Below are positions 10,350-34,056 of a DNA stretch of 64,000 nt, piece after piece. The position numbers and the translations under genes are program-made. How positions within the stretch are numbered: the first letter of the stretch is position 1; every line of letters begins with the position of its first letter. The stretch covers positions 6,768,729 to 6,832,728 of the forward strand of contig OZ037770.1 of NCBI GenBank assembly GCA_964035545.1, written 5' to 3'. The notes under the pieces are model-generated. The model ran no database searches, was not told the origin of the DNA, and saw only the letters and a program-made list of their open reading frames with translations. This stretch comes from Bugula neritina (Eukaryota; Animalia; Bryozoa).

Positions 10350-13300
10350 TCACACATATACAAAGAATAAAATGACAGATACACATATATATAGAATGTT
10401 GGATATAAACACAGTGTTAGCAGGGCTTCCTGTGATCTTATTTTTAGCCTTGCTACCAAGTATGAGTTTAGGGGAGTGTGTACTTCGACCCGCAGTGCTG
10501 GAAGGAGTAGTGTTTGTATCTTGAGCACACTTCTCCTGCAGAGTCTGCAAGTAGAACATAGAACTGATGCTAAAGGCAAAGCCGAGTTTACAAAGTGGAG
10601 CACAGGCTAATAGAGTTAACACATAATCTCTGAAGAATAAAGAGTCATAAGCTGTGCTCTCATCTATATCATTATATGTTTATGTAAATCGCTACTGGCA
10701 TTTATATTTCTAAGGAAAATCGTACAACTAATCAACAGAAATTAAAAAGATTACTCAGTGAGAATAGTAATAGATAATTGTAAGTAAGTGTAAGTAACTA
10801 GTTACGTACTAGTTAGTAAATAGATGTGAGTTGGGCATCTTTTATTGCAATTGTACACAAAAGTTCGTTTAGTTAAGAAGTAAGATAAAGATAAATTCAA
10901 AATGTCACCAATAGAAAAAATGTTTAGATGAGTAGCAAATGAAAAGCTGTATTATAAGGGTACCTGCTCTTGGTTGCCAGCGCAGATGTCATCATGGAAG
11001 TTCCGTTTCCATTTATCTGCCAACTTTCTGACAGATGATTCGTCAGATGTGCAGACGTTGGTGAAGTCTGTGTTGAGAAGACAATTCACTGGGACAGTGA
11101 GGTAGCTGAAAGCAGACGAGATAAATGCTACATCGCATGTATATGTTCACGTTTCCTACCCAAACTATTAATGAAAGTATCACTAGCAACATCATGCAGT
11201 AAACTTTACCTGCAGATGTCTTTCAGTTGATTACTTGGACTAAGTACTGGACCCCACACAAGCTTGCTTAGAGAATCTAAACCATCTTCCCTCAGTGAAC
11301 CAAAGCATGCCTAAAATAGACAGTTCCCGGTGCAACATCAAGTAGAGAACTCATGTGGAGTTGATTCAGTAGCAGAATAACTGTATACTTACAGAGATAT
11401 GAGAGGAGCAATCAATGTCTCGTGTTGGGAAGCACTCAATCACTCTTTGTATCTTCTGTGCAAGAGAGTACCTCTGATGAGGTGTACACACGCCCCCGCA
11501 GTGAGGCTTAGAGTCCTCCAATAAACAACCGACAAATGTATTGGAATCTAAATTCGAACACCTCCTCTCCGATGCATAGCATGACGCGACGTTAGCGAAG
11601 GCACAATCTACAACATAACCAGACATGCGAGAATTGAAGTTCAGCATAGTACAGGTGTTTGCGCCCATTTATTTGCTGTATGCTCTACACCCTATCACAC
11701 CCTACCCTACCCTGTCCAACCCTACCTTACCCTGTCCAATCCTACCCTACCCTGTCCAACCCTACCCTACTAAGTTTATTTGATCAAATATCTAAAACTA
11801 AGTGCTTTTCATCATTGTACTTGTAAATGATCTGTTTATTTCTCTTTCAAAGAATGGTTTGAAAAAGTCACCAGTGTGACAGATCTTTGCATAAGTATTT
11901 GGTGCAAAAATGCAATTCATAGAAATTAGTTTACTACCCTTCCCCAGACAAGGTGAGTAAAAGTGATATAAACCAAGCAGTAGAATTACAGAAACTGCAA
12001 TAATATAATGAGACAAGTAAAGTAGACAATATAAAGGAAAACGCGTACCAGTCTCACACCAGATGGGGAAAAGCTGTCTAGCTCTCACGAGACTTGCATC
12101 TGCAGGAGATATGCGAGAGTTATCTCTTTCTACACACTCATCAAAACAGGAAATAGCTGTGGAAAACTTCCTGAAAAAATATAATGTAGAATAGCAGTCA
12201 GCATTCGATACCATATTACAGGTTACGTGCAAACATTAGCCGTAGATATAAAGAAGCAGTTTGCGGCAAAAAGTAAGTGAAACTGTATGCAGAATATTTT
12301 TAATACCTGCAGATTTCAGTCTTGTACTCTTCTTTCCGCAGATTACCAGCCAGAATATCAAACTCAGTAATTTGAGAGAGTTGCTGTCTGCATACGCTGC
12401 AATCTGCAACAAAAATGTTGTCTAAGAATTAACCAAAAGATTTCAGAGTAAAATGATTAAAGCACAATTAAAAATATATCCATTCAATGCTTTAGAGAAC
12501 TTCAGCAAGCACATTTTGCAGCATTGCAAACTGCTTCACACCGTATGCGATCAGTCACTTAGTGATAACTGCCGGTTGAATTAGTCTGTAGCCTTGACAG
12601 CTGAAACATTCTAGAACAATGCAGGAGACATTCGACTAATGGAAACTAGCCAGCAGTACTTTGTATAAAAGTGCATGGTGCTATAGAGTAACTTATTCTC
12701 ACATGTGGGAGGCGTGAAAGTGCTGCTGCTATCATTGCTATTAGACACAATCTCCACGGTAGCTGGCTGCGCGACGTAACTGACTCCATTGATCTCTACG
12801 GGAGGCAAACCTCGGCGCAATGTGTTGGCAGCAGATGTCGCTACAGACGGGTCATCAGTGATGAGGTCAAACTCTACCTTGATGCTTCCTGTGAACAGGA
12901 TACAGAAGGGTTTTAGAGCTTACGGTAATAAATAGCCTTAGAGTATATATATGAATATAAGAAAGCAGCCGTGGTTTAGGGGTTAGAGCGTTTGCCTAGT
13001 AAGCACAAGTCATGGGTTTGAGCCCTGACAAAGGTCATTGGTGGTGTTAGGAAAAGCATCCAGTCATAATTGCTATTAGATGTTGCAGAGAAATGAGGTT
13101 GGGATAAGAAATTCACCTGGAGATATCTTGAGATTAGTCACAGCACTCTTTGGCACTGCAAGGCTTTGCGCTACTTCCTGTTTTATTTGATTTTTAACCT
13201 CATTGGTCCGGCCTCCGACCACAGCCTCGTAGTCTGCTTCCAGTAACATGCTTACGGCCAGCGTGTATCCTGGGCCTACAGTTTATATATAGAGTTGACC

Positions 13301-16300
13301 ATCTGAATAGCTATAGTGCCTGCTCATGTACACCAGGTAACTTGTGTGTAGTGCACTAGCGTAACATTCAGAAAGACTTCCGCTTGTATTTGATATACTT
13401 GTATAAATTTAACATATATTTTACCTAGATACTTTTATTTAATATATTTGCAGGCAAATTGATAATTAGATAAATTTTAGCAAATAAAAAAAAACATTTC
13501 ATATAATAGCCATAGCAACTATATTAGTATCCCTTAGCAACTATTACAATGTTTAACAACTACATCAACTAGTAGCCTAGCAACTGTATTAACTAGTAGC
13601 CTAGCAACTACAATAACTAGTAGCCTAGCAACTGTACTAACTAGTAGCTTAGCAACTGTATTAACTAGTAGCCTAGCAACTGTAGTAACTAGTAGCTTAG
13701 CAACTGTATTAACTAGTAGCCTAGCAACTGTAATAACTAGTAGCCTGGCAGCTGTATTAACTAGTAGCCTAGCAACTGTACTAACTAGCAGCCTAGCAAC
13801 TACAATAACTAGTAGCCTAGCAACTGTATTAACTAGTAGCCTAGCAACTAACCAGGAGAAGTAGAAACTGAAGGTAGAGCCGTAGAACTTTCTGTGGATG
13901 ACTGAATGAAGGTAGTGGTAGACTGCGTGGTAAACTGTGTGGTAGATGTAGATGTTGTAGTTGAGGATGTACTAGAAGTGAAGGCCTCCACCACAATGTT
14001 CTGGCAAACATTGGACCAAATGGAGTTGGATCTGACACACTTCCTTCTATCTAGAGAGCCAAGGAATTGCTGCTCTACAGCCTGGGTTTCTCTTATTTGA
14101 TCAGCACATGGGGTGGTGAGAGTCTGCCCACTTTCTGGTAGGGTCAATGTAGACAGCATGCTATTAGAGATGCAGGTACTGAAATCATTGGCCAGTCTGA
14201 AAACAATCACGCAGATTAATGTTAACTGAAGTAGTGGTTGACTTACAGCAGTTGCATAGTATTAGTAACAGGAGATGCCATTGATATATAAAATATAGCA
14301 AACAAGCTACAAACCTAAATGTTAAATCAGAAATTAGAAATAATAGCTAACTTCCATCTTTTTACTGAACACCACAACTAAAGACTGCAAAATCTGTGTA
14401 ACATGTTTGCATTGTGAAGAAAAATTCAGAACTAAGGTTACATGTGGTCATGCTTCAGAAAGATATTGACAGATATGAGATATCAAATGATGAAACAATG
14501 CAGACGGCAAACTCACCCACAGAATATTGGAGTAGTAGTGAACTGACTCATGCCAAGCCAGCGGTCTCTGGTAGCCATGTTGAAACAGACATTGTCAACT
14601 GCAGTTCTACATATCCCAGATAGCTCACACCTGTGGTCAGGTCAGGTTTATTATACAAGAAATGATGTGTAATATTGAAGACGAACTAAAAACCCCCAGC
14701 AACCCTTTAAATCTGTATTTGAAATTAGTCTAAAATAATGAATAAAATTTAAAGGAAGACTTTAAAAATAAGGTTACGGGAAAATCATCCCTGAACAGAA
14801 AATAGTTGGAGTTATCTTCTACACCAGGGAATTACTCTGTGTGTAGGCTAATTCTTTGATACTGAAAAGGCTATCAACCAAATATTTATATCAATTCATC
14901 TAAGAAATGTGACTAAAACGCATGTATTTCCTGTGAGTGCTATGCAGTGGCTGCAATGTGAAGCTTTCAATAGATTTAGGAGAAAATTAATAAACAGTTA
15001 ACTGAATTTAGTGTGTTGTTTTCTCATTTTTAAATTAGTCAAAGAAATCACCCATAATGCAATGTATAATTGTGAATATATTTTAATATAAAAAAGAGAA
15101 TAACTCTCTTACTTATTATAGTATAATATTGCACATAAATCCTGTCATTTTCATTTTAATTCTTTATTAAATTCAACATATTTCTAAGTATCTTATTCTT
15201 TGCATTTTATCTTAACTATTTTATCTAATATAAAATAAACCCACCTAATAGCATGAGATATTGTAGTCTCCTGGTAGTAAAAAGATTGGGCCGGTGTGCA
15301 CATGCCCGTACAGTCGTATGAGCTCATAGCCCTAACAACACACTCCCTGTAGTCTTCTACTGAGTCGCATGGTATCTGGCCCTCAACATCAATATACTGG
15401 TCTATGCACCCCTTGGCTAACATCATAGGACATTGGGGATTACAGGCTAATTCTTGCACAGTTTTAACCCTGATTTTCTGCCTGTAAAAATAGACATCAT
15501 GTGATATAGTTGGTCAGCCTGTGCACTGTTATATTATAATTTAAAATCTATTCAATTTGAATTTAAAGTCTAAAAGTTGAGCCTTATTTTAAACTTAGTC
15601 ATTTTCAAAGCAAAAAACTCTGTTCTTCTATAAGTATCATAAATATTATGACTGTGAGTGAGTGTGAAAGTCACTGTGACTAATTACTTTAACTAATTAC
15701 TTTAACTGAGAACTCACATGAATCTGTAGGTTTCTGAGCCATCAGTGCACCCATTCAGACAAAACATCAAAGCCTCCAACTCATCACAGTTGATCTTATC
15801 AATATCTTCATAGGTTGATTGGCAGGAAGTACATACGTCTGCAACTCCTCTGATGTCTACAACACAACTTAGTATTAGTACATTATTGGCGTAGCTCATA
15901 ATGAGTTTAGAAAAGCAATCTCCATTACATGCCAATATTAGAATGCATACATTAACAAAGATGTTGTGGCAAGCTTGTTTTCTTGCGTTCCAAATAAAAA
16001 ACAAATAATAAAAACTTAAACTATTAAGTTTAATGGTTACTGCACTTAAATAAAAGCAGAGTACTAGTGTTTCAAAATGTCAACATTATGATTTGCAAAA
16101 AAGACGAGAAAAATTCAAATGAGAAAACATTAGAAATATAAAACACATGCTACTTCCAAAGATCAGACGCCCTACATATAGATTGTAACATTAAAAAAAG
16201 TGCATATAGTATTTCACGGTGACACGACATTTCACAAATGTCAATTCAAAAACACCCATTTCGAAAAAGACAATTCCCAAATTGACAATTCCCAAATTGA

Positions 16301-19300
16301 CAATTAATAAATTGACTTTTAGAAAAAAGACATTTCTAAAAATGACATTTCACAAATGATACGGCCCAGTCGGGTGTGAGCTCGACCGGGTCGAGAATAA
16401 GTTCATATAAACGTGGGCAATCGCAGATTAGGACTGTTTGGTAGCTAACACTACTTCCGTGATAGCCTAACTCATACGGGTTTATGTTTGTTGCTGAAAG
16501 CTTTAAATCTTGTCAAGTTCAAGTTGAAATAATTACTACTTATTTACTTTTACTTTTATACTTGTATTATTGCGTGATGTTACTATGTACATTATATGTT
16601 ATTTAATTTCATTAACCGTATTTCATTTTCTTCTTACTTTTCAGTTTTAACTTATGAAATACGGTTAATAAAATTAAATAACATATAATGTACATAGTAA
16701 CATCACGCAATAATACAAGTATAAAGGTAAAAGTAAATAAGTAGTAATTATTTCAACTTGAACTTGACAAGATTTAAAGCTTTCAGCAACAAATGTAAAC
16801 GCTGTATGAGTTAGGCTACCACGGAAGTAGTGTTAGCTACCAAACAGTCCTAATCTGCAATTGCCCACATTTATATTACTTTATTCTCGACCCGGTAGAG
16901 CTCACACCCCACTGGGCCGTATCAATTGTGAAATGTCATTTTTAGAAATGTCTTTTTTCTAAAAGTCAATTTATTAATTGTCAATTTGGGAATTGTCTTT
17001 TTCGAAATAGGTGTTTTTGAATTGTCATTTGTGAAATGTCGCGGATTCGTATTTCACCGTATGTGTGATTGGCAGGTTGCTCATAAAGATCTCTTGCAGG
17101 AGTCACTTCCACAGAATGTTCAGAAGTAGACGACTCCATTAGTTTATGTCCAGTGGAACATGCTGTATTCCACTCAGCTGACGGATCTGAACATCTTAGT
17201 TTTACAATTTCCTGTTTCAGTTGTTGAACTGCACCATTTACACTCCTGCAAACGGTGCAAGAAATAATTCAATATCATCTAGCTAATTCTTAAGAAACTC
17301 TTAGTACTGCATGGTAATGCTTGATAGATGATGAACCTTTTCAATCAACTTTTTATGAAATATTTTATTCACTTTCAAATAGGTAGTGAACAAGATATAA
17401 TACTCCTTGGCCACAGTACTCAGTATATGTGCCATCTGAAGCACCCAGACCGACACACAGACAGACACACAGACAGGCGGAAAAACAGACACACAGACAG
17501 GCGAACAGACACCCAGACAGACAGACACACAGACACAGATGAAAAAAGAGACAGACAGACACACTTACTGTAGAGAAGTGTCACATGGACTGAGTATAGA
17601 ATCCTGTGATCCAGGAAGAGCTACTGATCCATACACAGTGTTGTTCAAACAGCTGACCACCTCTTCCAGAGTACTGCAAACGATACAGAAAAAAGGCTGA
17701 ACACAAGTCCAATATATCATTAGCAGAGGGCAACGGCTGGACTTGCTAACAGTTCTTAAGTGAAAATGGAATAAATGAGTGAGAATGAAGAGTGTCGACC
17801 AGCAACAACAATTACTAAATTATCTTGGGTTAACTCACCAATAAAAAGACTATTAATAGACAAGAGATTGATAGTAGACGAATGATAGACTGCTCTTATA
17901 CTGATAATAGACTGTTATTAGAATGACTATAGAATGCTAGTAGAATGATTGTAGATTGTATATTCATAGTAGATCGATAGTACACTTATTATAGATTGAT
18001 AGTAGACTGAATATAGACCGTTAGTAGACTGAATATAGACTGTTAGCAGATAGACGTATACCTGCACACATCCTGAACTGAAGTAGCAGGTTGCAGAAGA
18101 ACGAAACCTGTTGATGGTGTCAAATCCTTGCTGACACCTGCAAAGCACTTCTTTACTGAAGTATGACACATGCCAGTAGATGGAAGACTGCAAAGCACTT
18201 GTTTCTGTCAAGTAGAATGAAATGCATGTTATAATACAGATAACTAAAAAATACTTCACAAACCTATAGTGATGTTAGAAGCTTGAGGTTTACGCAGCTG
18301 TATTTATGTTCAGACATGTCCGCAGTTAATTCTAAGATATAGCAGAATCCGTAACTAATGTCAGAAATATTTATACAAATATTCAGCAAACTAATAGCAC
18401 CTGAGAATTAAAGCTTTGCTTTTTTGCAGACTCAAACCTTACAGGGCACATAAGGAAGGTTGCCTAGCCCCCCCCCCCCAACTTCAAAAGCAAATGAAAG
18501 TTGCTAGAGGCCAGTCTATTCAGAACCAAGTAGATTAGGATAAGTATTATTCAGCTCAAACACAAGATAAGCTCCGGGATAAAGCAAGTCACCTACTTCC
18601 AAAGTGTTGATGAATTTGCTTCTTAATGCAGGTGTACACAATCCACCGCAGCCTTCTGAAGCCTCCTCCACACATGTCTTCCAGCTGAAACAACATACAC
18701 AGAGGTTAGGAAGGATCTAGAATATCTGGTATATGACACTCTAGAAGCATCACTTAGTCACTGGGTCTAAGAACTTGTAAAGTTATAGACACACAACAGC
18801 CCAATGCAAGGCTGAAATCTCTTACCTCGGGAATCCAATAGAGCAGTCCTCTGCATTGTTTCTGCTGTCACAGTCTTCAATGTCAGCCATCTTGAAATCA
18901 GTGACACATTCTATAAACAGACAGAAACTCAATTAACTGGATATATTTACAAACTTGATGCAATAAAACAGCCATGTAAAAAAGAACACAAAAATATTTG
19001 ATTTTATTAAACTTCCTAATTCTCTGTGAAGAATTCAGAATCACCATAGTATACACAAGGAAGTGCCCTATTACTAACAATATACAAGTGCTGCGATGTA
19101 GAAAAGGATGAATAAAAAGCAGAGTAAAGGATTTTACCTTCGATAGGTGATGATGGGATAAGGGAAGGCAACTCTGGGACCACAACAGGGGGCGTGTCTC
19201 CAGCTAACAAACTGTCACAAGCATCAGAAAATTCAGCACTTGGATTCGAGCAGACAACTCCTTCTGTCATGGACCAGTTGGATACAAGCTGCAGGGTGGC

Positions 19301-21546
19301 ATCTATCACACTGTAATGTATGTGTTTACCTTGTACTTACTCTACTGTATACTGTACTTACTCTACTGTACACTGTACTTACTCTACTGTATACTGTACT
19401 TACTCTACTGTATACTGTACTTACTCTACTGTATACTGTACTTACTCTACTGTATACTGTACTTACTCTACTGTATACTGTACTTACTCTACTGTATACT
19501 GTACTTACTCTACTGTATACTATCTACTTTACCGACACACTTACTGTGACTGCCGAGCACACGGAGATCTAATCTGTAAGTCAACAGCAGTGAAAGTCAC
19601 ATTCTCAGATTTGCCGTCTTCTAGACACTTTCGGAAATTATTCATCATCCTGCAGAATAAGATACATGCAGTGAGATATACTTTTATTATTATTATATTT
19701 TATTATTTCATCATGCTACTTATTATGATATAATACATACAGGAGTTATAGTAAATCAACATAAAATAACTCTAATGTATTGGCATAGCATTGCATAATG
19801 TATTTAATGTAGTAGAAAACAAAGTAAATATATAGAAATGATATATTGTAAGATGATATGGAGGTGTGGGAATCTACAGAGTAATGCATGAAGCTAATAT
19901 ACCTGCAGGGAGAACAACAATATACAGCAGTGCAGCTATATTGCTCGGAATAAAACATTTATTGCTTATCACAGAACATATCTCTGATACAGAAAACCCA
20001 AATCAGCACAAGTATTGTTTCATACAGAGAAGCAAGTGGCAATGAGCGGATGCGGAACAAGAATAATATTTTAAACTCGGGTTCAGGCAGAATTGTAAGA
20101 AAACTCACTGGCACATCTCTGTAACTGTTCCTTCTGTGTCTATGTTTATAATCTTAGTAAAGGTTCTGTCCCCAAACAGACCTACAGAGTGCAGAGAACT
20201 CAGGTTATATACATCACAGAAACACGCGCAATAATATAATAATGTAGAATATCATAATACAGTAACGTATAACTTAGCATACAGTATTATACTGCAGTAT
20301 TACATTACAGTAACGTATAACACAGTATAAAGTATCATAATACAGTATTACACTATAGTAATACAGTATTATAATACAGTAACGTATAACACAGTATACA
20401 GTATTATACTACAGTATTATATTACAGTAACGTATAACTTAGTATACAGTATTATACTACAGTATTACATTACAGTAACGTATAACATGGTATACAGTAT
20501 TATACTACAGTATTACATTACAGTAACGTATAACACAGTATAAAGTATCATAATACAGTATTACACTATAGTAATACAGTATTATAATACAGTAACGTAT
20601 AACACAGTATACAGTATTATACTACAGTATTACATCACAGTAACGTATAACTTAGTATACAGTATTATACTACAGTATTACACTATAGTAATACAGTATT
20701 ATAATACAGTAACGTATAACACAGTATACAGTATTATACTACAGTATTACATTACAGTAACATATAACACAGTATAGAGTATTACACCATAGTAATACTC
20801 ACCCAGCAAACACTCATTAGCCACATACTCCCAGCAGAAGTCTCCAGAAGTTCTGTCCAGGTGACACACTATGAAACCCTCCACGTATGTAGCAAAGGCT
20901 CTACGCCTATTGGCTGAACACAGAGAGGGGCATTGAGAAAACACCCCTTCCTCTGCCAGACAGTCGGTCCATCTAAAAGTAATCATATACACAATTGATA
21001 TTAATCTGACTCAACTGTACATAGCTATCTTTACCAGAACCGCGCTCTAATTTGAAACATAGTTATTGTATTTTTAACCAATAGAATTCGCTTCAGAATT
21101 TATTCTATCATAGCTTTTAATAGAACACAATATATGCAGTTTAAGATAAAATCCCATACAACATATAAAAATAAAATAATATTTTGTGCATTACCTGTCG
21201 AAGTTATCCCCACATAGATGTGGCTGTAGGACAGAGCAGTTTCCAATACTAACAATGTCATTTGGACAAGCTAAAACATCGTATATATTCTATATATATA
21301 TATATATATGTGCTATGACTATGTTATATGCCATATATATGCTGTATAAATATGCTGTATAAATATGCTATAAATATGTTATATTGCTCTCATTTAATGC
21401 TCAGCAATGACATTAAATGATTGAGCTCTCTCACCATGGTCACAAACTCAAGCTGCTAGCATTTTGCAAGGCTCGTGACTCCTAGGTGACCCCTAGAGTC
21501 ACTTGAGCTCACTTGAGCTCCGAAACAGCTGCTGTCCACAGATTGA

Positions 21547-21645
<99 letters not shown>

Positions 21646-23710: not shown

Positions 23711-23788
<78 letters not shown>

Positions 23789-26700
23789 TATAATTTTTTT
23801 ATCCTAGTGTCTAATTTGCTGGAACAGCTGTGGCCTAGTGCCATTTAGAGGTTCTCACAGAGATAGAGTGTATAAAGAGATATGAGATGAGAACTACAAT
23901 ATAACTTAAGAGTGTAAATAACAAATAAAATATTTTCTACTCACTCTTCTCTCTGAGCACAGTTGAATGGGTTGAGATTTCTACATGGGTTAGCACAAGA
24001 TTTGTCAGCAGAATACAGCACGCATTCTATAAATACATATTAGATAGTCTATAAATACATATTAGATAGTCTATAAATACACATTATATAAATCTACATA
24101 CACATTATACAAATCTACATACACATTATACAAATCTACATACACATTATACAAATCTACATACAAATTATATAAATATAAAGCTTAGATAATTTATAAA
24201 TGTACACACCTTCTCCAGGCTCTAAAACATTCAACATATCACAGGTAGCATCTGCAGTGCCGTTGAAATTGCTCGCTTCACATATACTTTGATAAGTCGC
24301 ACCAGAATCTTGACCTCTTCGCTTACCATCTATTTGGTTTACACAGTCGTCATGGTGATACATTGACCTCCAATTTTCACCTATCTTTCTGATGGCCTCT
24401 GTAAGTAAAAACTACACTCAATAATGGACTGTATGATATGGTGTTTTCACAATAGAGAAATGTGTGTCATATGAAGAGTAGAGGAAAGTTGGAGTAGCCC
24501 TCTTACCCCGTTCTCTTTGAGTAGTGCATAGATCACTAATAGTTTTGTTATCTTCAAACTCATTGGTTAATCCATCGAGACAATCTGAGCCAGCAACAAA
24601 ATACCTGAAATATTTCACAGAAAAATCAGTTGTCTGCTTACAGGGCAGCTTGCGTTATGAATAAAATATAATACACTCATCAGAGGTGTCAGTCACTGAG
24701 TTGGCACTCATCAGAGGTGTCAGTCACTGAGTTGGCAGTCAACAGAGGTGTCAGTCACTGAGTTGACAGTCAACAGAGGTGTCAGTCACTGAGTTGACAG
24801 TCAACAGAGGTGTCAGTCACTGAGTTGGCACTCATCAGAGGTGTCAGTCACTGAGTTGATGATCAGCAAAGGTGTCAGTCATCAGAGGTGTCTGAGTTAT
24901 TCTGAGACTTAGTCAGTTAAACTATCCAAGATACCAAATTATTTTGCGGAAAGTGTTTCCTATTATAATTTCATCAAATTTGTTGAGAAAATACTTGCTT
25001 GCATATACTGAGGACTGAATATAGAACAATGGAGCTTTATATTACAAAGGTATAAAATGTGACATGTGAAACATTCACTTCTGTTTTGCAATAAAAATAG
25101 TATTTGGCAGAGGAGAGCCAATGAAAGTCATTCAATGAATGCTTACAGTTCATACATTGTTCAAGCCTTTACATTTACAGTAATAACTATAAGTTAACAT
25201 GAACACAAGTAAGCATTGTTACAAGTAAGTATTGTTACAAGTAAGTAGTGCTAAAAGTAAGTACTGTGCAGCTATTGACTTACTCGCATGAGTTTTCCGA
25301 AGAAATGTCAGTTGTGAGGAACTTTTCAAAGTTCATATCCGTTTTGGAGTATTTGATGTTCAGACATTGATTCACTGCGGAGATGCATTCTCTGCTCTCC
25401 ACTGAAAATGGAAACATAATCATCTGTTGAAATAAATACAAGGAGTAGAACTAAAGTTTACAAGAGAACACAATTACTAGTAGCAGTGTAGATACATAAG
25501 AAAAAGAGCACAACTCCTAGCTGGAAATTTACATATGTAGTAGACAACTTACAATCATATAAGAATGGCGCTTACCTTCACGACTCACAGTACAGACGAC
25601 CTCTCTGGCCAGTTTGTAAGTGTTGACTCGCCTCTGAGCTAAGTTGCAGGCGCCATTACACTGGTAGTCAGCAGTTCCTTCTTCATAACATGTCAGCCAT
25701 CTTGGAAATTCAACATGATGCAGTTAACAATACCAAAACTCTGAGGACAAAGCACTAGTTTGTTGACATTCTTGACCAATGTTATTCAAAGAACATATTA
25801 ATGCTGGTTTACTATTGACTGGACAGACCCAAAACAAGTTACTAGTATACTTCACGTTTTTGATGCCGGACAACTCACCTCTCATATTCACCTTCCTTGC
25901 ACCAGTCGGATGTGGTGAGATAACTCTCACATAGCCACAGGTCCAGGTGTCTGCAAGCTGTAAGTAAAAACAGATTAGATTGTAGTCTATCAATTCATGA
26001 ATGAGTTGGACGTAAGACACTGCAGCCTTGATAAGTCAAACATAGCCTAAAGTCAAACCTACTTGAGTCACAGGTGAGCACAAGCTGAGACTGGAGAGCC
26101 CGGTATATCGGACTGGAGTAGTTACCACTCGGCTGTCCGGCAACAGAGCAGTTCTTGTAGCAGTTGGCGGCAGCAGTGTAGTTCCTATAAAAGTGTCAGC
26201 AACTTGGACCACTCAGGTACACCATCTGAACACATGTTAATGTCAACTCATAGCGACATTATTCTATGATGTGATAAATAGCTTCAGGACCTACCTGCAT
26301 CCTATGTCTCCAAACTCTTTTAGGTTGAAGTTAGGATGTTCGTGTAGAGAGGCTATTTGCATGTGATATGTTGCTGATTCATCACAATATTCGCAAGCTA
26401 TAACACAATATTAATACAATATATCATACAGTAATACGATATATAATACAGTAATACGATATATAATACAGTAATACGATATATCATACAGTAATGTGGT
26501 ACATCATACAGTAATACAATATATCACACAGTAATACGACTTATCATACAGTAATACGATATATCATACAGTAATATGATAAAGGATAGACGACTCACTT
26601 CCTCTTGCTGCGGTGACCTCTACCAGAGTAGCAACTTGACCTTGACCTGAAGTTGTTGTAGTCATATCAGCAAAAGTGGAAGTAGTTGAAGGAGTTGTAG

Positions 26701-28531
26701 TAGTTGTGGTTGTGGATGTGCTAGACGTGGTGCTAGTTGTGGTGGTTGAACTGGTGAAATCTGTAGAAAGACAGAATATATGATGTAGCATACAGGTATA
26801 AGGTGTAACATACAGATATATGATGTAACATACAGGTATAAGGTGTAACATACAGGTATAAGGTGCGACATACAGGTATAAGATGTGACATACAGGTATA
26901 AGGTGTAACATACAGGTATAAGGTGCGACATACAGGTATAAGATGTGACATACAGATATATGATGTAACATACAGGTATAAGGTGCAACATACAGGTATA
27001 AGGTGTAACATACAGGTATAAGGTGTGACATACAGGCATAAGGTGTGACATACAGGTATAAGGTGAGACATACAGGTATAAGGTGAGACATGAAACAGTG
27101 TAACCAACCTTGACCAAAGCAGATGTCCTCGATGTCTACAGTACTGTTGCAGTAGCCATTGTAAGCTGTATTCATCATTAGCCTCAATCTCTCAAGGTCA
27201 CTTTCTCTGTGGCAGGAAGAGCCGGCGTCCTTATAGACTGTGAAACAGTCTTCAGCCTCGGAATACAACCTAAAAGATGATATATTTTTCTAGAATTTAT
27301 GAAAATTAAATCAGCAGGCGAATCTCTAATATTTACTAATTTCACAGTGAACAGCTCAAAAACAAGTCCAGGCATGTAAATTGTAACAGATAAGCTGGAA
27401 TCATGGGTATCCTTTTGTCAACAGCCTCTGGATAAAGCAGAGGCAGTTGAAGTAGCCTTGGAAAAATTTGATGAAATAGAATACTTGTCTCTCCAGAATG
27501 AAATATCAGTCTAATTTAAACTACGTAAGTTACTTACTGGCACCGGAATTCCTTAGAGAGACCTGCGCCATTGTAGAAGAACTCCCAGGCCATGACGTAT
27601 GAGATACTGCTGCCAATTGAGCTTCGGTGAGACAGCACGTCTTTCAGACAAGTTTTCACTTCCTCTAGACAAGCCGAGCTGGCGTCTGCGCAGTCAATCT
27701 ACAAACAGGAAATCAGGTCAACACGGCAGCCAGCACTAGGTAGCGATTTACGAGTTACTCTTCCCCTCTCACTAAGTGACGTTATAGGGGCACTCTCTGA
27801 TACCATCACAACTTGGCAATACTATATAGATTCTAGAACCACCACTTTTTGTATCTGTCAATCAGTATATCACAATTCTTCAACCAATTAATATGTTATA
27901 ATGAGTATAATATAGCATAGAGCTGTGGGTTCTACAGAGGCTATGTGTAGAAAGAGGATTATCCTGATTACGATATCAACAACCAAGTCAAATTCACTAA
28001 TCTACAGCTAATCCTCACATAAATCAACATGTGTTGCGAGAGTTGTTGGTACGAATAGGTTATTGTAGGCCATCACCAGTACACCGACTTGCATAAATCA
28101 CCAGGATACGTGCTTGTATTAGGCAGAGAATTAATTGATGGTGACAGAGATGTACCGATTATACAAATAATATAAGCTAGAAGTGCAACAGTTTGTCTAG
28201 ATCTATATTCATTTTCTGAGTTTAAGATAAGATTTCCAGGAAGTTTCATAGTAGTAGTGCGACAGCTTTCACAACCCAGTAAACATAAGAGATGATCTCA
28301 CTAACATCTAGGGAAGATTATATTTAATATTCTATGTTGAGATAAAAACATAAATAGTTGTTATTAAACATATTGAGCCAATGAATTATGATCTTACAGT
28401 TTGAAGTTTGTAACATCAAACTTCATTGGCTAAAATAATTTAGAGCTGCTACTGGTTACAGCAACTAAATTGAATTTGGCAAACAACAACTTTTGCTAAT
28501 ACTCCTCAAAAGCTCTACATTAATAAAATTC

Positions 28532-28586
<55 letters not shown>

Positions 28587-31500
28587 GAAACGAGCAGACT
28601 GAAAAGTATAGAGTGAAAAGTAAACACACCTCATGGTGAAGACGATATGCTTTATTCCATCGATCAGATACCTGACAGAATCCATCACAAGTGTAGCCAG
28701 TAAGAGCTTCATCCACACACGATCTCCATCTGCATATGTATGTAGTGTATACAGTGTGTGTAGTGTGTGTACTGTGTGTAGTGTGCGCACTGTGTGTAGT
28801 GTGTAGTATATGTAGTGCGTGTAGTATATGTAGTGCGTGTAGTATATGTAGTATGTGTAGTATATGTAGTGTGTGTAGTATATGTAGTGCATGTAGTATG
28901 TGTAGTATATGTAGTATGTGTAGTGCATGTAGCGCGTGTAATTTGTAGTTCATATACAGCTTGTGTAATGAATGTAGTGCATTATACAATGTGACAATGA
29001 AAGGCATGCTGGAAATATGCAAGTAAAAAAGAATATTTCAATTTATAACTAAAATACAGTAAGTCTAACACATTGACTTTAGTATTTATGGAGCCATCTA
29101 GCTGTTAGAATGTGTGCAACTCACTGAGCTATGTTGGAGCAGTCAGACGACGTGTTGTAGGTGAGATGTTCACAGGATAGAGTGTCGGCCATTCTACATC
29201 CTGTCAATGAGTAGCATCTTACTATACTATATTAGCAGAGTACATAGTTATACTATACTGTAATACTACTGTAGCATTAATGTAGCTATACTGTAGTAAT
29301 TATAAGACTAGAATACTGTAAACATATTTTTAGTTGCAATGATAAAATTATTCTTAATGATACAATCATTGAAATAAGAGAAGTTTACAATGACTGGCAG
29401 ATACATAGAATTTCTTAAAGAATGACGAGATGCAATGCTGCCCCCTTATTCATGCTGACTTAGATTGGTTCAAATACCATCTAGACTGCAGATCAAGCTG
29501 TAGGATATCTGTACAAAGGTTCCACGTCAAGTATAAATGTATACATAATTGTGTGCTTTAATCTCCGGTGAGCATAAATCCCACTCCAGTTTTAATAAAC
29601 TATTGATTTATGTACAGATTAGAGACTTGCATGGCCGGAAGAATATGGCTTCCAATATATATCTCACCTATGTGACATTGGAGCACTAGCTATGTTACTG
29701 CAAGTGGTGGATACAGCGAGCTGCACTATGTTACTGCAAGTGGTGGATACAGAATACTGCATTATGTTATTACAAGTGGTGGATACAGAATACCTACTGC
29801 ATTATATGTTATTGCAAGTGGTGGATATAAATTGTACACTAACCATCCTCACAGTTGACCCTCCACCACTCATTGATAGTGTTGGCCTCAGTGGATACGG
29901 CAGGGGAGTATAAGTAACTGACTTTCTCAAACACAGAGCCATCAGCCAGTTCACAATCGAAGTAGCAGCCCAGCACTCTCCTGGCAGCCCTGTGTGTACA
30001 AGGTAAGTGTAGGTAGTGTCTGTGTGTGTACAAGGTAAGTGTAGGTAGTGTCTGTGTGTGTACAAGGTAAGTGTAGGTATTGTCTGTGTGTGTACAAGGT
30101 AAGTGTAGATAGTGTCTGTGTGGGTACAAGGTAAGTGTAGGTAGTGTCTGTGTGTGTACAAGGTAAGTGTAGGTAGTGTCTGTGTGTGTACAAGGTAAGT
30201 GTAGGTATTGTCTGTGTGTGTACAAGGTAAGTGTAGATAGTGTCTGTGTGGGTACAAGGTAAGTGTAGGTAGTGTCTGTGTGTGTACAAGGTAAGTGTAG
30301 GTATTGTCTGTGTGTGTACAAGGTAAGTGTAGGTAGTGTCTGTGTGTGTACAAGGTAAGTGTAGATAGTGTCTGTGTGGGTACAAGGTAAGTGTAGGTAG
30401 TGTCTGTGTGTGTACAAGGTAAGTGTAGGTAGTGTGTGTGTGTACAAGGTAAATGTAGGTAGTGTCTGTGTGTGTACAAGGTAAGTGTAGGTGGTGTCTG
30501 TGTGTGTACAAGGTAAGTGTAGGTAGTGTCTGTGTGTGTACAAGGTAAGTGTAGGTAGAGTCTGTGTGTGTACAAGGTAAGTGTAGGTAGTGTCTGTGTG
30601 TGTACAAGGTAAGTGTAGGTAGTGTCTGTGTGTGTACAAGGTAAGTGTAGGTAGTGTCTGTGTGTGTACAAGGTAAGTGTAGATAGTGTCTGTGTGTGTA
30701 CAAGGTAAGTGTAGGTAGTGTATGTGTGTGTACAAGGTAAGTGTAGGGAGTGTCTGTGTGTGTACAAGGTAAGTGTAGGTAGTGCATGTACAACAGGTAG
30801 GTATATATTACAAGGTTTATACAGAAGGCAAGTACATGTATATATGGATAGCATTGTAAGTACATGATAGGTATGATACATACTACAAGTTATTCCAATC
30901 TAATTATTCTAGCATACTCTGTCACATCATCCAACGCTTATGCTGAATAAAACATAAAGGCTTGAGAGCTAGAGCCTAGAGCTAATAACTTATACATATT
31001 GTGTGGTAAGGAGCCATAGTGGTTACTGGTTTTGGCAGTTGGGGTTCCTATCAACTATCCAGTTGAGCAGTTGGTGATATCAGGAGGGGCACATCAAAGC
31101 CCTCCCACCATGCCGCCAAAATTGTGTGAGACAATTCTTAGCCTACGAAACTTTACCCTTTGGTATCCCATAGAAATTGCGACAATAAACAAAAACCCAA
31201 TAAGTTGCATGTAAGCAATCTTGCAGATTCGTTACGCTTACACTCTATTAGATAGTTTTACTGTTATATGAAAGACTACATACGTGCAGGTCCTTTCCCC
31301 AACCTGTAAGGAGCTCTCATCAGGTAGAAGAGGTGAGGCTAGGGACGTGAAGAAGGGAGTTACTTGCTGGTCACATTCCGAACAAACTAAATCAGGAAAA
31401 TTTTCAATCAAGTACAATACAGTGTGCTATATATGTCCATGGAGCTATATAACAATCTATTTGCAAGAGTGCTACACTTTCGACTGCAAAGTCTACAAAG

Positions 31501-34056
31501 CTTTAAAGAGGTTACAAAGTAGGTAAACTGCAGTTGGGAACAAAATAGCGAGTTATTAGTTGGATTAACAAGATTAATCTGAGTCATCAACTTCCTCTCA
31601 ACATCCTCCACCTCCAAAAGTCAAACAACATTTAAATCTATAAAGAAAGTTGTTCAGAAACAGCAAAGCTGTAACTCAAATTAAAATTTGTTGCAAAAGA
31701 AATGATTAGAATTGAGGAACATATAAAATGTTGAATACGAGCACTATCATATGACAACATCTTTGGAATATTCTTATATTATGTAATGACGTTATGTTGC
31801 TGTTTCCCAAGCTACTAGGATGACTGAGAAATTTCAGTCCAAAATTTAGCATAATTGAGTAAATTTATTATTCCAAGATGAGATATAAGGTAGGATATAA
31901 GGTAGGATATAAGGTAGGGTATAAGATAGGGTATAGGGTAGGGTATAGGGTAGGGTATATGGTAGGGTATAAGATGGGATATAAGGTAGGATATAAGGTA
32001 GGATATAAGGTAGGATATAAGGTAGGGTATAGGGTAGGGTATATGATAGGGTATAAGATAGGATATAAGATAGGATATAAGATAGGATATAAGATAGGAT
32101 ATAAAGTAAGATATAAGCTAGAATATAAACTAGGATGCAGGGAGACTAAATAGTTTCTCTGCAAAGTAGAAGATAAACATGCACTTCAAATTTAAATCGG
32201 AATGTGAATAATTTCTAAATTAACTTGGGGCACATTAAAACATTTGGATATCATAACTAGCAAGTGTGTCAAAGCAAAGAGCAGTAATTACTAAGTTTAT
32301 TTCCACATCCAGCAACACTAATGAATTAATTAGCCGCTATTGGAAGTAGCATACCCTGTTTCATCACATACTAGAAGGTTGATGATATCAGCAGATAACT
32401 CGTTCTACCACCACAGAGATTATGTAATGGTGAGATTCACCAGAACTTAACACTGGAGATTAAAGATCTCTAGCTGAACATGAGTTAATTAGGATTAGAT
32501 GGTGACATGCTAATACCTCAGTACCTGGCACTTACTATAATATCTTTACACAACAAATACAATCCTAGCTAATCACACATATAACACTATATATACAAAT
32601 AAACCATCATATGACTTAAATATAATAATCAGGTATTGCAACACTTTCACATGATGTGTTATATTATACCATAGAATATATTCCCCAACTTATTAATGAA
32701 GTTAAAGATGAAAGGCCAAGAGGAAACTGACTGAGAAATAAAAAGGTCTGTGTTCTAAATGAGAAATATAGCAAGTTTGAGCTTTAAAAGAATTTCGACC
32801 AGCACCCCAAGACAAAGGTCATAAATGCAATTAGAGAACACAGGCTATTGGAATGTAACATTATTTGAAGCTAAGCTTATTGCAGCCTATTAAGGTTGAG
32901 TCATGTCTCATTACGTATACATTGTGACATTACATAATCTACTGAGAGGGTATAATATTATACTCACGGTTTCCAGCTTGAGTCAAGCTAAAATAAAGGA
33001 CATAAATATTAATAAACAAGCCTCCAGCACTGATTACTTCAGAGTAACCACATGAAATGTAGGAAGAGATAACTTCCTTTTTAGGCTACCACATAATTAA
33101 CATGTAATGAGATGAATTGTGTACAAAGCATAAGATAGATAGCTTCCCCATAGCTTCCACTGCGTTATATGTGTTATATGTGTACATGTGCAGTGCATGC
33201 AGCATTGCGATGTTATGGTGCTTATTGTATACTCAAGATATAACATACTCATGATATGTACCCATGATATATACTCATGGTCAAGGTTGGGGTAATTGTA
33301 ATTAATTACATTCATACATAATTGACCCCAATCCTGTTCATAGTATAAACTCATGGTATTTACTCATAGTATAAACTCATGATACAGCCTACTATTTAGT
33401 ATATATATATTAAACATATATATCTGCTAATAGACACACTGATATATTACCTTATAAGTGACAAGAGTAGAAGCCCACCTAAAACAAACAAAACTGTTTG
33501 TATCAAAAACAGCATTGAAGCATTTATACAAAATACCTGCAAATTTAAATTTATAAAAAAAGCAACAATTTGCATCAACATTTTACAAAAATTATACTGA
33601 TGAGTTATAAATTTTCAAAAGAACTTTAAATTGCAAAGAATAACTATTTTAGAGTAAGTATTTAGTATAAATGTTTAGAGTAAGTATTTAGTATAAATGT
33701 TTAGAGTAAGTATTTAGTATAAATGTTTAGAGTAAGTATTTAGTATAAATGTTTAGAGTAAGTATTTAGTATAAATGTTTAGAGTAAGTATTTAGTATAA
33801 ATGTTTAGAGTAAGTATTTAGTATAAATGTTTAGAGTAAGTATTTAGTATAAATGTTTAGAGTAAGTATTTAGTATAAATGTTTAGAGTAAGTATTTAGT
33901 ATAAATGTTTAGAGTAAGTATTTAGTATAAATGTTTAGAGTAAGTATTTAGTATAAATGTTTAGAGTAAGTATTTAGTATAAATGTTTAGAGCAAGTATT
34001 AGAAGCAAGCCCAGGCAGGACATACCCAAAGAAACGAGGTGAGAGGATAGAATCAT
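10350..34056 (-). CDS. Large (~1,900 aa, ~44 exons) secreted, probably GPI-anchored Cys-rich repeat protein with Thr/Ser stalks and a SEA-like domain; no recognised orthologue
   Basis: Phase-compatible GT-AG exons traced from ATG 34056 (signal peptide [31 protein letters not shown] over exons 34026-34056, 33451-33478 and 32968-32987), through e.g. 31284-31386, 29844-29989, ~28630-28729, ~27538-27698, ~25576-25701, ~23351-23530, ~20802-20972, 17058-17245, ~15245-15482, ~13852-14196, ~13117-13276, ~12692-12889 and ~11392-11609, to the last exon ~10350-10544, which ends in a hydrophobic tail ([20 protein letters not shown]). Confidence 0.88.
12692..13276 (-). other. SEA-like domain exons within the large Cys-rich gene
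   Basis: [50 protein letters not shown]|GSIKVEFDL resembles the SEA beta-alpha-beta pattern with a G-S-[IV]-x-V motif. It follows a Thr/Ser-rich stalk. Confidence 0.7.
12965..13075 (+). mobile_element. tRNA-derived SINE, copy 1
   Basis: GCAGCCGTGGTTTAGGGGTTAGAGCG (A-box), a B-box-like GGTTTGAGCCC, then a shared body AAAGGTCATTGGTG...AGCATCCAGTCATAATTGCT. Confidence 0.75.
13565..13850. repeat. Minisatellite, 24-nt unit x ~12, abutting a donor
   Basis: Unit AACTAGTAGCCTAGCAACTGTATT. Confidence 0.93.
16218..17048. mobile_element. Foldback / Mutator-like non-autonomous element with ~400-bp inverted arms
   Basis: 16223-16626 is the near-perfect reverse complement of ~16653-17042, with a spacer of about 26 nt. 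G...C termini, a 9-bp direct repeat GTATTTCAC at 16209-16217 and 17049-17057, and reiterated GACATTTC/GACAATT subterminal motifs. Confidence 0.88.
19330..19522. repeat. Minisatellite, 21-nt unit x ~9, filling a short intron
   Basis: Unit CTGTACTTACTCTACTGTATA. Confidence 0.93.
20250..20795. repeat. Composite minisatellite abutting a donor
   Basis: Reiterated ACAGTATTA / ACAGTAACGTATAAC blocks. Confidence 0.9.
21550..21645. repeat. (TA)n microsatellite
   Basis: Long TA run; similar runs at ~23714-23785 and ~41356-41457. Confidence 0.95.
22559..22745 (+). mobile_element. tRNA-derived SINE, copy 2
   Basis: Same head and body as the copies at 12965 and 50261, extending to CAGGAATAGCGACTATAAA. 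Confidence 0.75.
24675..24895. repeat. Minisatellite, 31-nt unit x ~6
   Basis: Unit CAGAGGTGTCAGTCACTGAGTTGRCASTCAW. Confidence 0.9.
26775..27092. repeat. Minisatellite, 20-nt unit, making up nearly the whole intron
   Basis: Unit CATACAGGTATAAGGTGTAA. A second 20-nt array (CATACAGTAATACGATATAT) fills the neighbouring intron at 26405-26580. Confidence 0.92.
29990..30790. repeat. Minisatellite, 32-nt unit x ~25, each unit a copy of the adjacent 3' splice site
   Basis: Minus-strand unit ACACTACCTACACTTACCTTGTACACACACAG. The last copy is the acceptor of exon 29844-29989. Confidence 0.95.
31880..32130. repeat. 12-nt minisatellite (ATAAGGTAGGAT-type)
   Basis: Direct tandem repeats in mid-intron. 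Confidence 0.9.
33650..33992. repeat. Near-perfect 26-nt minisatellite x ~13 beside the donor of the first coding exon
   Basis: Unit GAGTAAGTATTTAGTATAAATGTTTA. Confidence 0.95.

What the first reader, a model, noticed from the sequence alone, without database searches (positions are those of the whole stretch)
10350..34056. Unrecognised ~1,900-aa cell-surface protein built from seven Cys-rich super-repeats, mucin stalks, a SEA-like domain and a GPI tail
Seen: the ORF track misses this gene, but ~44 exons splice in phase. One module recurs seven times: [123 protein letters not shown] (module B). Each is followed by a helical Cys module C (e.g. [39 protein letters not shown]). Four units are preceded by a CxxC module A (CSEC, CEYC, CTSC, CSVC). 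The architecture is SP-ABC-T/S-ABC-BC-BC-BC-ABC-T/S-SEA-ABC-GPI. Inference: the Cys spacing recalls neuritin/DUF19/RGM-N-type disulfide-bonded helical bundles. A long, possibly SEA-cleaved, GPI-tethered array could be a lineage-specific adhesion, recognition or mucus-surface receptor. I do not recognise this architecture.
Basis: partly seen in the sequence, partly recalled or inferred. Interest (0 to 1): 0.85.

Follow-up and report, generated by a model that had tools for sequence, protein, structure and literature searches.

The report
Bryozoan Cys-rich repeat surface glycoprotein gene
This is a real, expressed gene of about 40 exons, probably from the bryozoan Bugula neritina, that encodes a ~1,850-residue, probably GPI-anchored surface glycoprotein made of seven copies of a cysteine-rich helical domain seen so far only in bryozoan-like sequences; its function is unknown.

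Summary
All seven "module B" motifs lie on the minus strand. Spliced RNA contigs from four studies join 12 exons (15856→10353) through GT–AG introns into one frame that stops at 10350–10352, and one 5,205-nt contig continues ~2.4 kb further upstream.

A profile of module B against 1.84 billion proteins finds one long relative: XP_067950508.1, an "uncharacterized protein" of the bryozoan Watersipora subatra, colinear with this gene but with five units instead of seven. It has no Pfam domain even at E ≤ 10. The gene is single-copy in its 216-Mb genome, probably Bugula neritina.

The proposed SEA region folds (pLDDT 77) as a β-α-β-β-α-β sandwich with a conserved G-S-I-K motif in the β2/β3 hairpin. 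SEA domains and dystroglycan appear among its structural matches but tie with unrelated ferredoxin-like folds. The Cys-rich unit is predicted helical at low confidence, so its fold is unresolved. Links to neuritin, DUF19, RGM or GFRα are unsupported. It is a lineage-restricted variant of the SEA/mucin-type GPI surface glycoproteins.

The parts
34026..34056 (-).
   Evidence: Phase-compatible with exon A1 but leaves only ~11 residues before the first CxxC. No RNA or orthologue support. Rival candidates at 35776-35731, 35727-35682 and 33515-33479.
31284..31386 (-). Exon A1: CxxC start of unit 1
   Evidence: Colinear with Watersipora P0001 residues 30-62; AG/GT and in phase.
29844..29989 (-). Exon A1b (unit 1)
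   Evidence: P0001 residues 64-112, E = 3e-10; in phase. An alternative acceptor at 30019 has the same phase.
29125..29200 (-). Exon A1c (pre-B part of unit 1)
   Evidence: P0001 residues 112-135; in phase.
28630..28729 (-). Exon B1
   Evidence: Module-B profile 51.5 bits; 73% identity to P0001 residues 138-171; acceptor 1 nt before the W codon.
27538..27698 (-). Exon C1a
   Evidence: P0001 residues 171-223, E = 1e-12; in phase.
27109..27269 (-). Exon C1b
   Evidence: Predicted by the chainer. It fills the P0001 224-268 gap, but no separate HSP was found.
26599..26760 (-). Exon TS1: first Ser/Thr-rich stalk (62% S+T)
   Evidence: aligns to the S/T stretch of P0001, residues 269-309.
26295..26397 (-). 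Exon A2: CxxC start of unit 2
   Evidence: P0001 residues 315-348; in phase.
26063..26184 (-). Exon A2b
   Evidence: P0001 residues 350-418 HSP.
25879..25957 (-). Exon A2c (pre-B part of unit 2)
   Evidence: Same HSP; frame-anchored chain.
25576..25700 (-). Exon B2
   Evidence: Module-B profile 61.4 bits; P0001 residues 415-462.
25284..25401 (-). Exon C2a
   Evidence: P0001 residues 464-503.
24507..24604 (-). Exon C2b
   Evidence: P0001 residues 500-574 HSP.
24210..24398 (-). Exon C2c
   Evidence: Same HSP.
23945..24026 (-). Exon pre3 (pre-B part of unit 3)
   Evidence: P0001 residues 592-618. The scorer preferred a shorter alternative, 24026-23985; this version is also in phase.
23351..23529 (-). 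Exon B3
   Evidence: Module-B profile 71 bits; P0001 residues 619-679, E = 4e-18.
22892..22958 (-). Exon C3a
   Evidence: P0001 residues 678-700.
22246..22451 (-). Exon C3b
   Evidence: P0001 residues 699-762, E = 2e-16.
21195..21270 (-). Exon pre4
   Evidence: Weak HSP to P0001 residues 781-843; chain.
20803..20972 (-). Exon B4
   Evidence: Module-B profile 65.6 bits; 61% identity to P0001 residues 806-861.
20109..20181 (-). Exon C4a
   Evidence: P0001 residues 863-886.
19545..19649 (-). Exon C4b
   Evidence: P0001 residues 885-919.
19138..19310 (-). Exon C4c
   Evidence: Chain; by eye it resembles P0001 residues 920-955.
18826..18910 (-). Exon pre5 (unit 5, absent from Watersipora)
   Evidence: Prediction and paralogy only.
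18593..18684 (-). Exon B5
   Evidence: Module-B profile 40.2 bits, E = 9e-8; boundaries predicted.
18062..18155 (-). Exon C5a
Evidence: Prediction only.
17569..17673 (-). Exon C5b
   Evidence: Prediction only.
17058..17245 (-). Exon C5c plus linker
   Evidence: The 3' boundary is fixed by the RNA contigs' loose end in 4 runs; the 5' boundary is predicted.
15718..15856 (-). Exon A6: CxxC start of unit 6
   Evidence: RNA joints.
15245..15481 (-). Exon B6 (includes the pre-B part)
   Evidence: RNA joints. The donor is canonical after a 3-nt shift, with a C/T difference between RNA and window.
14517..14630 (-). Exon C6a
   Evidence: RNA joints.
13853..14196 (-). Exon C6b plus second Ser/Thr-rich stalk (40% S+T overall)
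   Evidence: RNA joints. The RNA lacks six single bases in total (in frame) between 13935 and 13950.
13117..13275 (-). SEA-like domain, first half (beta1-alpha1-beta2)
   Evidence: RNA joints; aligns to P0001 residues 1017-1068; AlphaFold model of the orthologue.
12703..12888 (-). SEA-like domain, second half. It starts with S-I-K-V, and the Gly codon is split by the intron.
   Evidence: RNA joints; split codon is Gly.
12307..12403 (-). Exon A7: CxxC start of unit 7
   Evidence: RNA joints.
12049..12170 (-). Exon A7b
   Evidence: RNA joints.
11393..11607 (-). Exon B7 (8 Cys)
   Evidence: RNA joints; module-B profile 78.2 bits; P0001 residues 1204-1282.
11210..11310 (-). Exon C7a
   Evidence: RNA joints.
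10964..11105 (-). Exon C7b
   Evidence: RNA joints.
10350..10544 (-). Last coding exon: S/T/P-rich linker, small-residue stretch, ~20-residue hydrophobic C-terminus (GPI-signal-like) and the stop at 10350-10352. The transcript continues at least 760 nt further 3'.
   Evidence: RNA joint at 10544/10964 in 4 runs; translation; stop position.

Best explanation
The region holds one expressed, single-copy, minus-strand gene of a cheilostome bryozoan, most likely Bugula neritina. It has at least 41 exons and encodes a secreted protein of about 1,850 residues. The protein is a string of seven copies of a ~150-190-aa disulfide-rich, predicted all-helical domain; four copies carry an extra N-terminal CxxC extension. 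Two short O-glycosylation-type Ser/Thr stalks and one SEA-like alpha/beta module interrupt the string, and it ends in a GPI-attachment-type hydrophobic tail. Inferred mechanism, by analogy with SEA-containing membrane mucins and dystroglycan: the protein is anchored by lipid in the outer leaflet and presents a long, rigid, glycosylated ectodomain. The SEA-like module may cut itself at the conserved Gly-Ser in the beta2/beta3 hairpin, so the large N-terminal part (six units) would be held non-covalently on a small GPI-anchored stub (unit 7) and could be shed under force. What is shown: the gene, its splicing over the 3' third, the frame, the repeat architecture, the orthologue, single copy, and purifying selection. 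What is inferred: secretion, GPI anchoring, O-glycosylation, SEA-type cleavage, and any role at the cell surface such as coat, adhesion or recognition.
Against: No signal-peptide exon is identified in the window. Pfam SEA does not match the orthologue by sequence, and the structural matches to SEA are tied with unrelated RRM and Cas6 folds and are topped by Trop2. The Cys-rich unit model is unreliable (pLDDT 48.5), so 'helical bundle' is only a secondary-structure statement. No GPI or signal-peptide predictor was available. The S/T stretches are short (~30-45 residues), so 'mucin stalk' may overstate them. Unit 5 exons have no direct RNA or orthologue support. The runs are labelled 'RNA?' as a guess, although intron-skipping contigs can only come from RNA. 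There are no data on tissue, localisation or function.
Confidence: 0.62

Rival explanations
1. The Cys-rich unit is a very diverged member of a known disulfide-rich helical family (GDNF-receptor/GAS1 domain, neuritin, DUF19, RGM N-terminal, saposin-like), so the protein is an expanded bryozoan version of a known GPI-anchored receptor family.
For: GFRalpha, GAS1, neuritin and RGM are GPI-anchored, and GFRalpha/GAS1 domains are helical and disulfide-rich (my knowledge, not tested here). The unit is predicted all-helical.
Against: hmmscan of the full orthologue against all Pfam-A at E <= 10 gave zero families, and the single exons gave none either. The unit profile against PDB sequences gave only a chance-level hit. 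The language-model search gave no usable hit. Profile searches of 1.84 and 5.8 billion proteins returned only bryozoan-like sequences. The Cys spacing of the unit lacks the C-x-C motif that I recall in GFRalpha domains.
Confidence: 0.15
2. The locus is not one gene: the 5' units (1-2) and the 3' units belong to separate transcripts, or part of it is a decaying pseudogene.
For: RNA was laid only on 10351-16350. Nothing upstream of 17245 was checked directly, and no first exon was found.
Against: One contig carries 2,400 nt upstream of 15857. On my model that reaches exon A2b, so it would cover units 2-7. A stop-free, GT-AG, in-phase chain runs through all 40 exons. The Watersipora protein is colinear across units 1-4, the SEA-like region and unit 7 in a single annotated polypeptide. 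pN/pS is ~0.24 with all Cys kept.
Confidence: 0.06
3. The alpha/beta module is not a SEA domain and does not cleave. It is a generic ferredoxin-like spacer or a Trop2/EpCAM-type juxtamembrane domain, and the protein is a single uncleaved chain.
Against: The seven residues I-S-P-G-S-I-K are conserved between two species that are only ~40% identical across this module, and they sit exactly in the beta2/beta3 hairpin. SEA domains of TMPRSS6, MUC16 and a mouse protease, and the dystroglycan region 601-735 that I recall contains its Gly-Ser cleavage site, are all among the hits. The module directly follows a Ser/Thr stalk, as in mucin-type SEA proteins.
Confidence: 0.4
4. The protein is a type I membrane or purely secreted protein, not GPI-anchored.
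For: No GPI predictor could be run. The omega site is only guessed from small residues.
Against: Both orthologues end in a hydrophobic stretch that runs to the last residue with no basic stop-transfer or cytoplasmic residues. The Watersipora tail contains Lys, Gln and His, making it weaker than a typical transmembrane helix, as GPI signals are.
Confidence: 0.2

Closest known systems
XP_067950508.1, uncharacterized protein of Watersipora subatra (P0001)
   Same: It has the same domain order (signal sequence, ABC, S/T, ABC, BC, BC, S/T, SEA-like, ABC, hydrophobic tail). It is colinear exon by exon with the window at 30-73% identity, and it is the only long hit in 1.84 billion representatives.
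   Different: It has five units and 1,429 aa, against seven units and ~1,850 aa here. Units 5 and 6 of the window (about 18910-14517) have no counterpart. It is itself uncharacterised and has no Pfam domain.
SEA-domain membrane mucins (MUC1, MUC16) and SEA-bearing type II proteases (TMPRSS6)
   Different: There is no sequence match to Pfam SEA. The stalks are ~30-45 residues, not hundreds. The anchor is GPI-like rather than a transmembrane helix. A whole Cys-rich unit lies between the SEA-like module and the anchor. Most of the mass is a Cys-rich helical array that mucins lack.
Dystroglycan
   Same: A mucin-like region is followed by a SEA-like module, which I recall is autoproteolytic. That region recurs as a structural match in three independent searches.
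   Different: Dystroglycan is a transmembrane protein with Ig/cadherin-like domains. There is no sequence similarity and no Cys-rich helical repeats.
GFRalpha / GAS1 (GDNF/GAS1 domain proteins)
   Same: They are GPI-anchored and built of tandem disulfide-rich all-helical domains (from my knowledge), so they may work in a similar way as rigid lipid-anchored ectodomains.
   Different: There is no Pfam GDNF match in the orthologue or exons. The Cys spacing differs. This protein has 5-7 larger units plus stalks and a SEA-like module.
Trop2 / EpCAM C-terminal ectodomain
   Different: The rmsd is 5.5-6.2 A and identity 8%. Trop2/EpCAM have thyroglobulin-type and Cys-rich N-domains of a different kind and a transmembrane anchor.

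Membership tests
SEA domain (Pfam PF01390) | Sequence match to the family profile | tested here: not met
   hmmscan of P0001 and of both window exons against Pfam-A at E <= 10 found no SEA hit.
SEA domain (Pfam PF01390) | Alpha/beta sandwich fold, beta-alpha-beta-beta-alpha-beta | tested here: met
SEA domain (Pfam PF01390) | G-S-[VI]-V-V-type motif in the beta2/beta3 hairpin | tested here: inconclusive
   G-S-I-K-V (window) and G-S-I-K-I (Watersipora) lie at model residues 64-68, in the hairpin. The motif is conserved but not canonical.
SEA domain (Pfam PF01390) | Autoproteolysis at Gly-Ser | not testable with these tools
   This needs protein biochemistry.
GPI-anchored proteins | C-terminal hydrophobic stretch running to the last residue, preceded by a short spacer and small residues | tested here: met
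   Translation of 10350-10544; the same layout is in P0001. This was by inspection only, with no NetGPI or PredGPI run.
GPI-anchored proteins | N-terminal signal peptide | tested here: inconclusive
   P0001 starts with a signal-like hydrophobic segment just before the first CxxC. No such exon could be assigned in the window.
   Zero Pfam families at E <= 10 for P0001 and for the single exons. PDB sequence search with the unit profile gave nothing.
   The unit model has pLDDT 48.5 and pTM 0.30. Foldseek's best hit is E = 0.45 with TM ~0.2. The model is too poor to decide.
Mucin-type stalk | Ser/Thr(/Pro)-rich low-complexity segment | tested here: met
   Exon 26599-26760 is 62% S+T. Exon 13853-14196 is 40% S+T overall, with a dense C-terminal run and an in-frame length difference in the RNA. 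The segments are short, and O-glycosylation is not testable here.
Orthologue group of XP_067950508.1 | Colinear domain order and unique best match in the genome | tested here: met
   tblastn colinearity. All genome matches of P0001 fall in this gene.

The most novel reading that the evidence does not exclude
The ~170-aa, 10-Cys helical unit is a truly new extracellular domain fold invented in bryozoans. The gene, which varies in copy number (5 units in Watersipora, 7 here) and differs by 2-6% between the assembled haplotype and the transcripts of three studies, is a polymorphic self/non-self or symbiont-recognition receptor of a colonial animal, shed through SEA-type cleavage.
Probability: 0.06. 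Interest if true: 0.85.

Novelty: new variant of a known kind. Interest (0 to 1): 0.45.

Why it matters
Bryozoa is one of the least characterised animal phyla at the molecular level. This gene defines a Cys-rich extracellular domain that neither Pfam nor two searches of billions of proteins connect to anything outside a handful of bryozoan-like sequences. That domain is embedded in a familiar chassis of stalk, SEA-like module and GPI tail. This gives a concrete, expressed, single-copy candidate for a lineage-specific surface-coat, adhesion or recognition molecule in Bugula neritina, an animal studied for larval settlement, fouling and its bryostatin-producing symbiont. It also offers a natural test of whether SEA-type self-cleavage operates in a GPI-anchored, non-mucin context. 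On the other hand, orphan Cys-rich surface proteins are common in invertebrate genomes, the orthologue is already predicted in RefSeq, and no function is in sight, so the immediate impact is modest.

Tried and rejected
1. Pfam on ten single exon pieces and on the full orthologue found nothing relevant. One weak FAZ1_cons hit (24.5 bits, below its cut-off) on a SEA-like exon was dismissed.
2. A combined alignment of the SEA-like region plus the last unit with exon rows (A2) was discarded because MAFFT scattered the short rows. It was replaced by A3 and A4.
3. AlphaFold of one ABC unit from a 6-row alignment was too uncertain (pLDDT 48.5). The Foldseek search with it was uninformative, as expected.
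4. A PDB sequence search with the unit profile gave only a Plasmodium RBP2b hit at E = 0.02, taken as chance.
5. The ESM Atlas feature search gave no usable hit.
6. The search for homologous proteins with P0001 (786-2,500 aa range) returned only itself, and the five-unit profile (about 120-375 aa) returned nothing.
7. Three weak hits of the B profile (P0005, P0007, P0008) look like low-complexity or unrelated repeats and were ignored.
8. My unconstrained exon chainer over-predicted small exons and used microsatellite translations near B1 and at 17567-17445. It was replaced by a frame-anchored chain.
9. Source species of the fragments P0004 and P0009 could not be determined from the sample accessions.
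Whole-protein analyses used the Watersipora orthologue as a proxy, and the window's exons were used one by one by reference.
12. The search of earlier findings returned nothing for this place.
Full report
**Observation**

The gene lies on the minus strand. Stop-free segments there contain all seven quoted "module B" strings. A generic pattern (aromatic-x2-C-x6-12-C-x1-2-[GSL]-x-C) finds exactly these seven on that strand of the 64-kb window, at 28728, 25699, 23528, 20971, 18683, 15351 and 11536, plus two microsatellite translations. Aligned, the seven cores share three invariant Cys and 19-38% identity to the first copy. They are true but old repeats.

**Transcription and splicing**

Thirteen public runs from four studies hold 7-9% of the sampled words of 10351-20350, as expected for exon-only content; one DNA run holds 94%. 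I laid contigs of four runs, one per study, on 10351-16350, staying within the operators' 6,000-letter limit.
- They gave 11 joints, all CT..AC on the plus strand (GT..AG on the minus strand) once the shifts flagged by the tool are applied.
- The single odd joint (14633/15248) becomes canonical with a 3-nt shift, where the RNA carries C and the window carries T.
- In all four runs the contigs continue beyond 15857 with 30 letters that match 17059-17088 at 29 of 30. This fixes a further junction, 17058/15856.
- One contig is 5,205 nt long. It has 760 nt 3' of 10351 and 2,400 nt 5' of 15857.
- The runs are only guessed to be RNA, but intron-skipping contigs can only come from RNA.

**Gene model**

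Frames were checked by arithmetic and split codons one at a time. A small exon chainer trained on the verified exons recovered 12 of 12 of them plus one false exon, but it was unreliable near microsatellites. A chain restricted to frame-anchored blocks gave an in-phase GT-AG path through all blocks; the blocks came from the Watersipora alignment or from paralogy.

The final model has 40 exons from 31386 to 10353: 5,486 nt, 1,828 aa, 123 Cys and 16 N-x-S/T sites, with no stop in any exon or split codon. Support by segment:
- RNA evidence covers 15856-10353.
- The orthologue supports 31386-19138.
- Exons 18910-17569 are predicted only. On this model the 2,400-nt extension of the long contig would reach exon A2b and so cover units 2-7, but that is an inference.
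- All five upstream B exons start 1 nt before the aromatic codon, and RNA-verified B6 starts in the same intron phase.

The order SP?-ABC-S/T-ABC-BC-BC-BC-ABC-S/T-SEA-like-ABC-tail is reproduced.

The 5' end is open. After the ATG at 34056 the only usable donor is at 34026, which leaves ~11 residues before the first CxxC. Other hydrophobic, phase-compatible ATG..GT exons lie at 35776-35731, 35727-35682 and 33515-33479. An SND1-like gene (SNase plus Tudor) at ~49.6-51.2 kb on the same strand bounds the search space.

**Relatives**

A profile of the seven B cores was searched exhaustively against 1.84 billion representatives. Nine proteins passed E <= 0.001 and only one is long: P0001 (1,429 aa, five matched stretches).
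- P0001 is XP_067950508.1, "uncharacterized protein" of the cheilostome bryozoan Watersipora subatra.
- Five of the other eight hits are single-exon ORF fragments: two are almost identical to the window and three come from unidentified Logan samples. The remaining three look like chance or low complexity.
- P0001 has a signal-like N-terminus directly before its first CxxC and the same module order, but with five units. It also has two S/T stretches, the SEA-like region and a hydrophobic C-terminus.
- It maps colinearly on the window at 30-73% identity. Units 5 and 6 of the window have no counterpart.
- Searching 5.8 billion clustered proteins with P0001 returned only itself.
- A profile of its five whole units returned nothing in the 120-375-aa range.

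That alignment shows that the real repeating domain is ~150-190 aa with 10 invariant Cys and an invariant Arg. "Module B" is its core.

In the window's own genome (216,009,554 bases, 321 contigs) all matches fall in this gene. The exception is two weak, nearly identical B-like exons 2.5 Mb away, which the whole-unit profile supports better. Together with the "symbiont metagenome" RNA runs and the Watersipora best hit, this makes B. neritina the likely source, but that is an inference.

**Constraint**

Of the 40 listed differences between the RNA contigs and the window, 22 are synonymous and 18 are not (pN/pS ~0.24; 21 further differences were not listed). No Cys is changed. The exons differ by 2-6% from transcripts of three studies that share the same variants. 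Without a baseline from neighbouring genes, this cannot be told apart from haplotype or cryptic-species divergence.

**Domains**

*Sequence searches.* No Pfam family is detected at E <= 10 in P0001 or in the single exons. This fails the sequence test for SEA, GDNF/GAS1, neuritin, DUF19 and RGM_N.

*SEA-like region.* I used P0001 residues 1004-1130 with the two window exons as separate alignment rows.
- It folds with mean pLDDT 77 and pTM 0.62 as beta-alpha-beta-beta-alpha-beta.
- The conserved I-S-P-G-S-I-K stretch puts Gly-Ser in the beta2/beta3 hairpin. In the window the Gly codon is split by an RNA-verified intron.
- Foldseek finds only weak ferredoxin-like matches, best E = 0.016.
- Dystroglycan appears again in the Atlas search.
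- The fold class and the motif position therefore fit SEA, but membership is not established and cleavage is untested.

*Cys-rich unit.* One ABC unit was folded from a 6-row alignment. It is predicted as 11 helices, but with pLDDT 48.5 and pTM 0.30. Foldseek (best E = 0.45), the PDB sequence search and the Atlas feature search all gave nothing. Its fold is unresolved.

*Stalks and tail.* The stalk exons are 62% and 40% S+T, and the second differs in length, in frame, between RNA and window. The last exon ends in ~20 hydrophobic residues up to the stop, preceded by a small-residue stretch. That is the layout of a GPI signal, and the orthologue shares it.

**Interpretation**

This is an expressed, constrained, single-copy bryozoan gene for a long, secreted, probably GPI-anchored glycoprotein. 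Its mass is an array of a lineage-restricted disulfide-rich helical domain on a stalk/SEA-like chassis. By analogy with SEA mucins and dystroglycan, I propose a rigid lipid-anchored ectodomain whose large N-terminal part may be held non-covalently after Gly-Ser self-cleavage and be shed under force. This is inference.

**Novelty**

This is a new variant of a known kind. The chassis is familiar and the orthologue is already predicted in RefSeq, but the repeat domain has no detectable relatives and the architecture is undescribed. A literature search found nothing relevant.

Noticed in passing
window 12951-13150 (intron between the two SEA-like exons): The metagenomic RNA run X1 piles up to a summed depth of ~56,000 here. 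Loose ends in several runs look to me like a tRNA T-arm, suggesting a highly expressed or abundant tRNA-derived SINE-like repeat in the intron. ARAGORN finds no intact tRNA in 10000-35000.
   Followed up: partly
window 16151-16350: A second high-depth repeat occurs in run X1 (~4,000) inside the 15857-17057 intron.
   Followed up: no
window 29991-30784, 33648-34000, 13567-13849, 26789-27091, 19332-19521, 20250-20798: The introns are full of minisatellites (for example 32 bp x 24.9 copies and 26 bp x 13.6 copies). Several translate as long open frames of up to 359 aa in three frames. These dominate a prokaryote-style ORF list and could be mistaken for genes or for Thr-rich stalks.
   Followed up: partly
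window 13935-13950: In the second Ser/Thr stalk the RNA contigs of three runs lack six single bases in total, in frame, so the stalk length differs between the RNA and the window.
   Followed up: no
window 10351-15857 (exons): Transcripts from three independent studies share the same variants and differ from the assembled sequence by 2-6% per exon. This may reflect haplotype or cryptic-species divergence in the B. neritina complex, or elevated polymorphism of this gene; no baseline gene was examined.
   Followed up: partly
G000:C6:9349155-9349415 and 9363016-9363237 (loci L009/L015 and L008/L016): Two nearly identical exons 14 kb apart on the same strand, 2.5 Mb from the window, match the whole-unit profile at 28.8 and 25.7 bits, with weak colinear pieces before and after. 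They are probably a tandemly duplicated, diverged paralogue carrying a single unit.
   Followed up: partly
window 49640-51179, minus strand: ORF pieces carry a Tudor domain (E = 1.4e-6) and a staphylococcal-nuclease domain (E = 6.8e-11). This is an ordinary SND1-like (Tudor-SN) gene upstream of the finding.
   Followed up: partly
window 18910-14517 compared with P0001: Units 5 and 6 of the window have no counterpart in the Watersipora orthologue (7 versus 5 units), so the number of repeats has changed between cheilostome lineages.
   Followed up: partly
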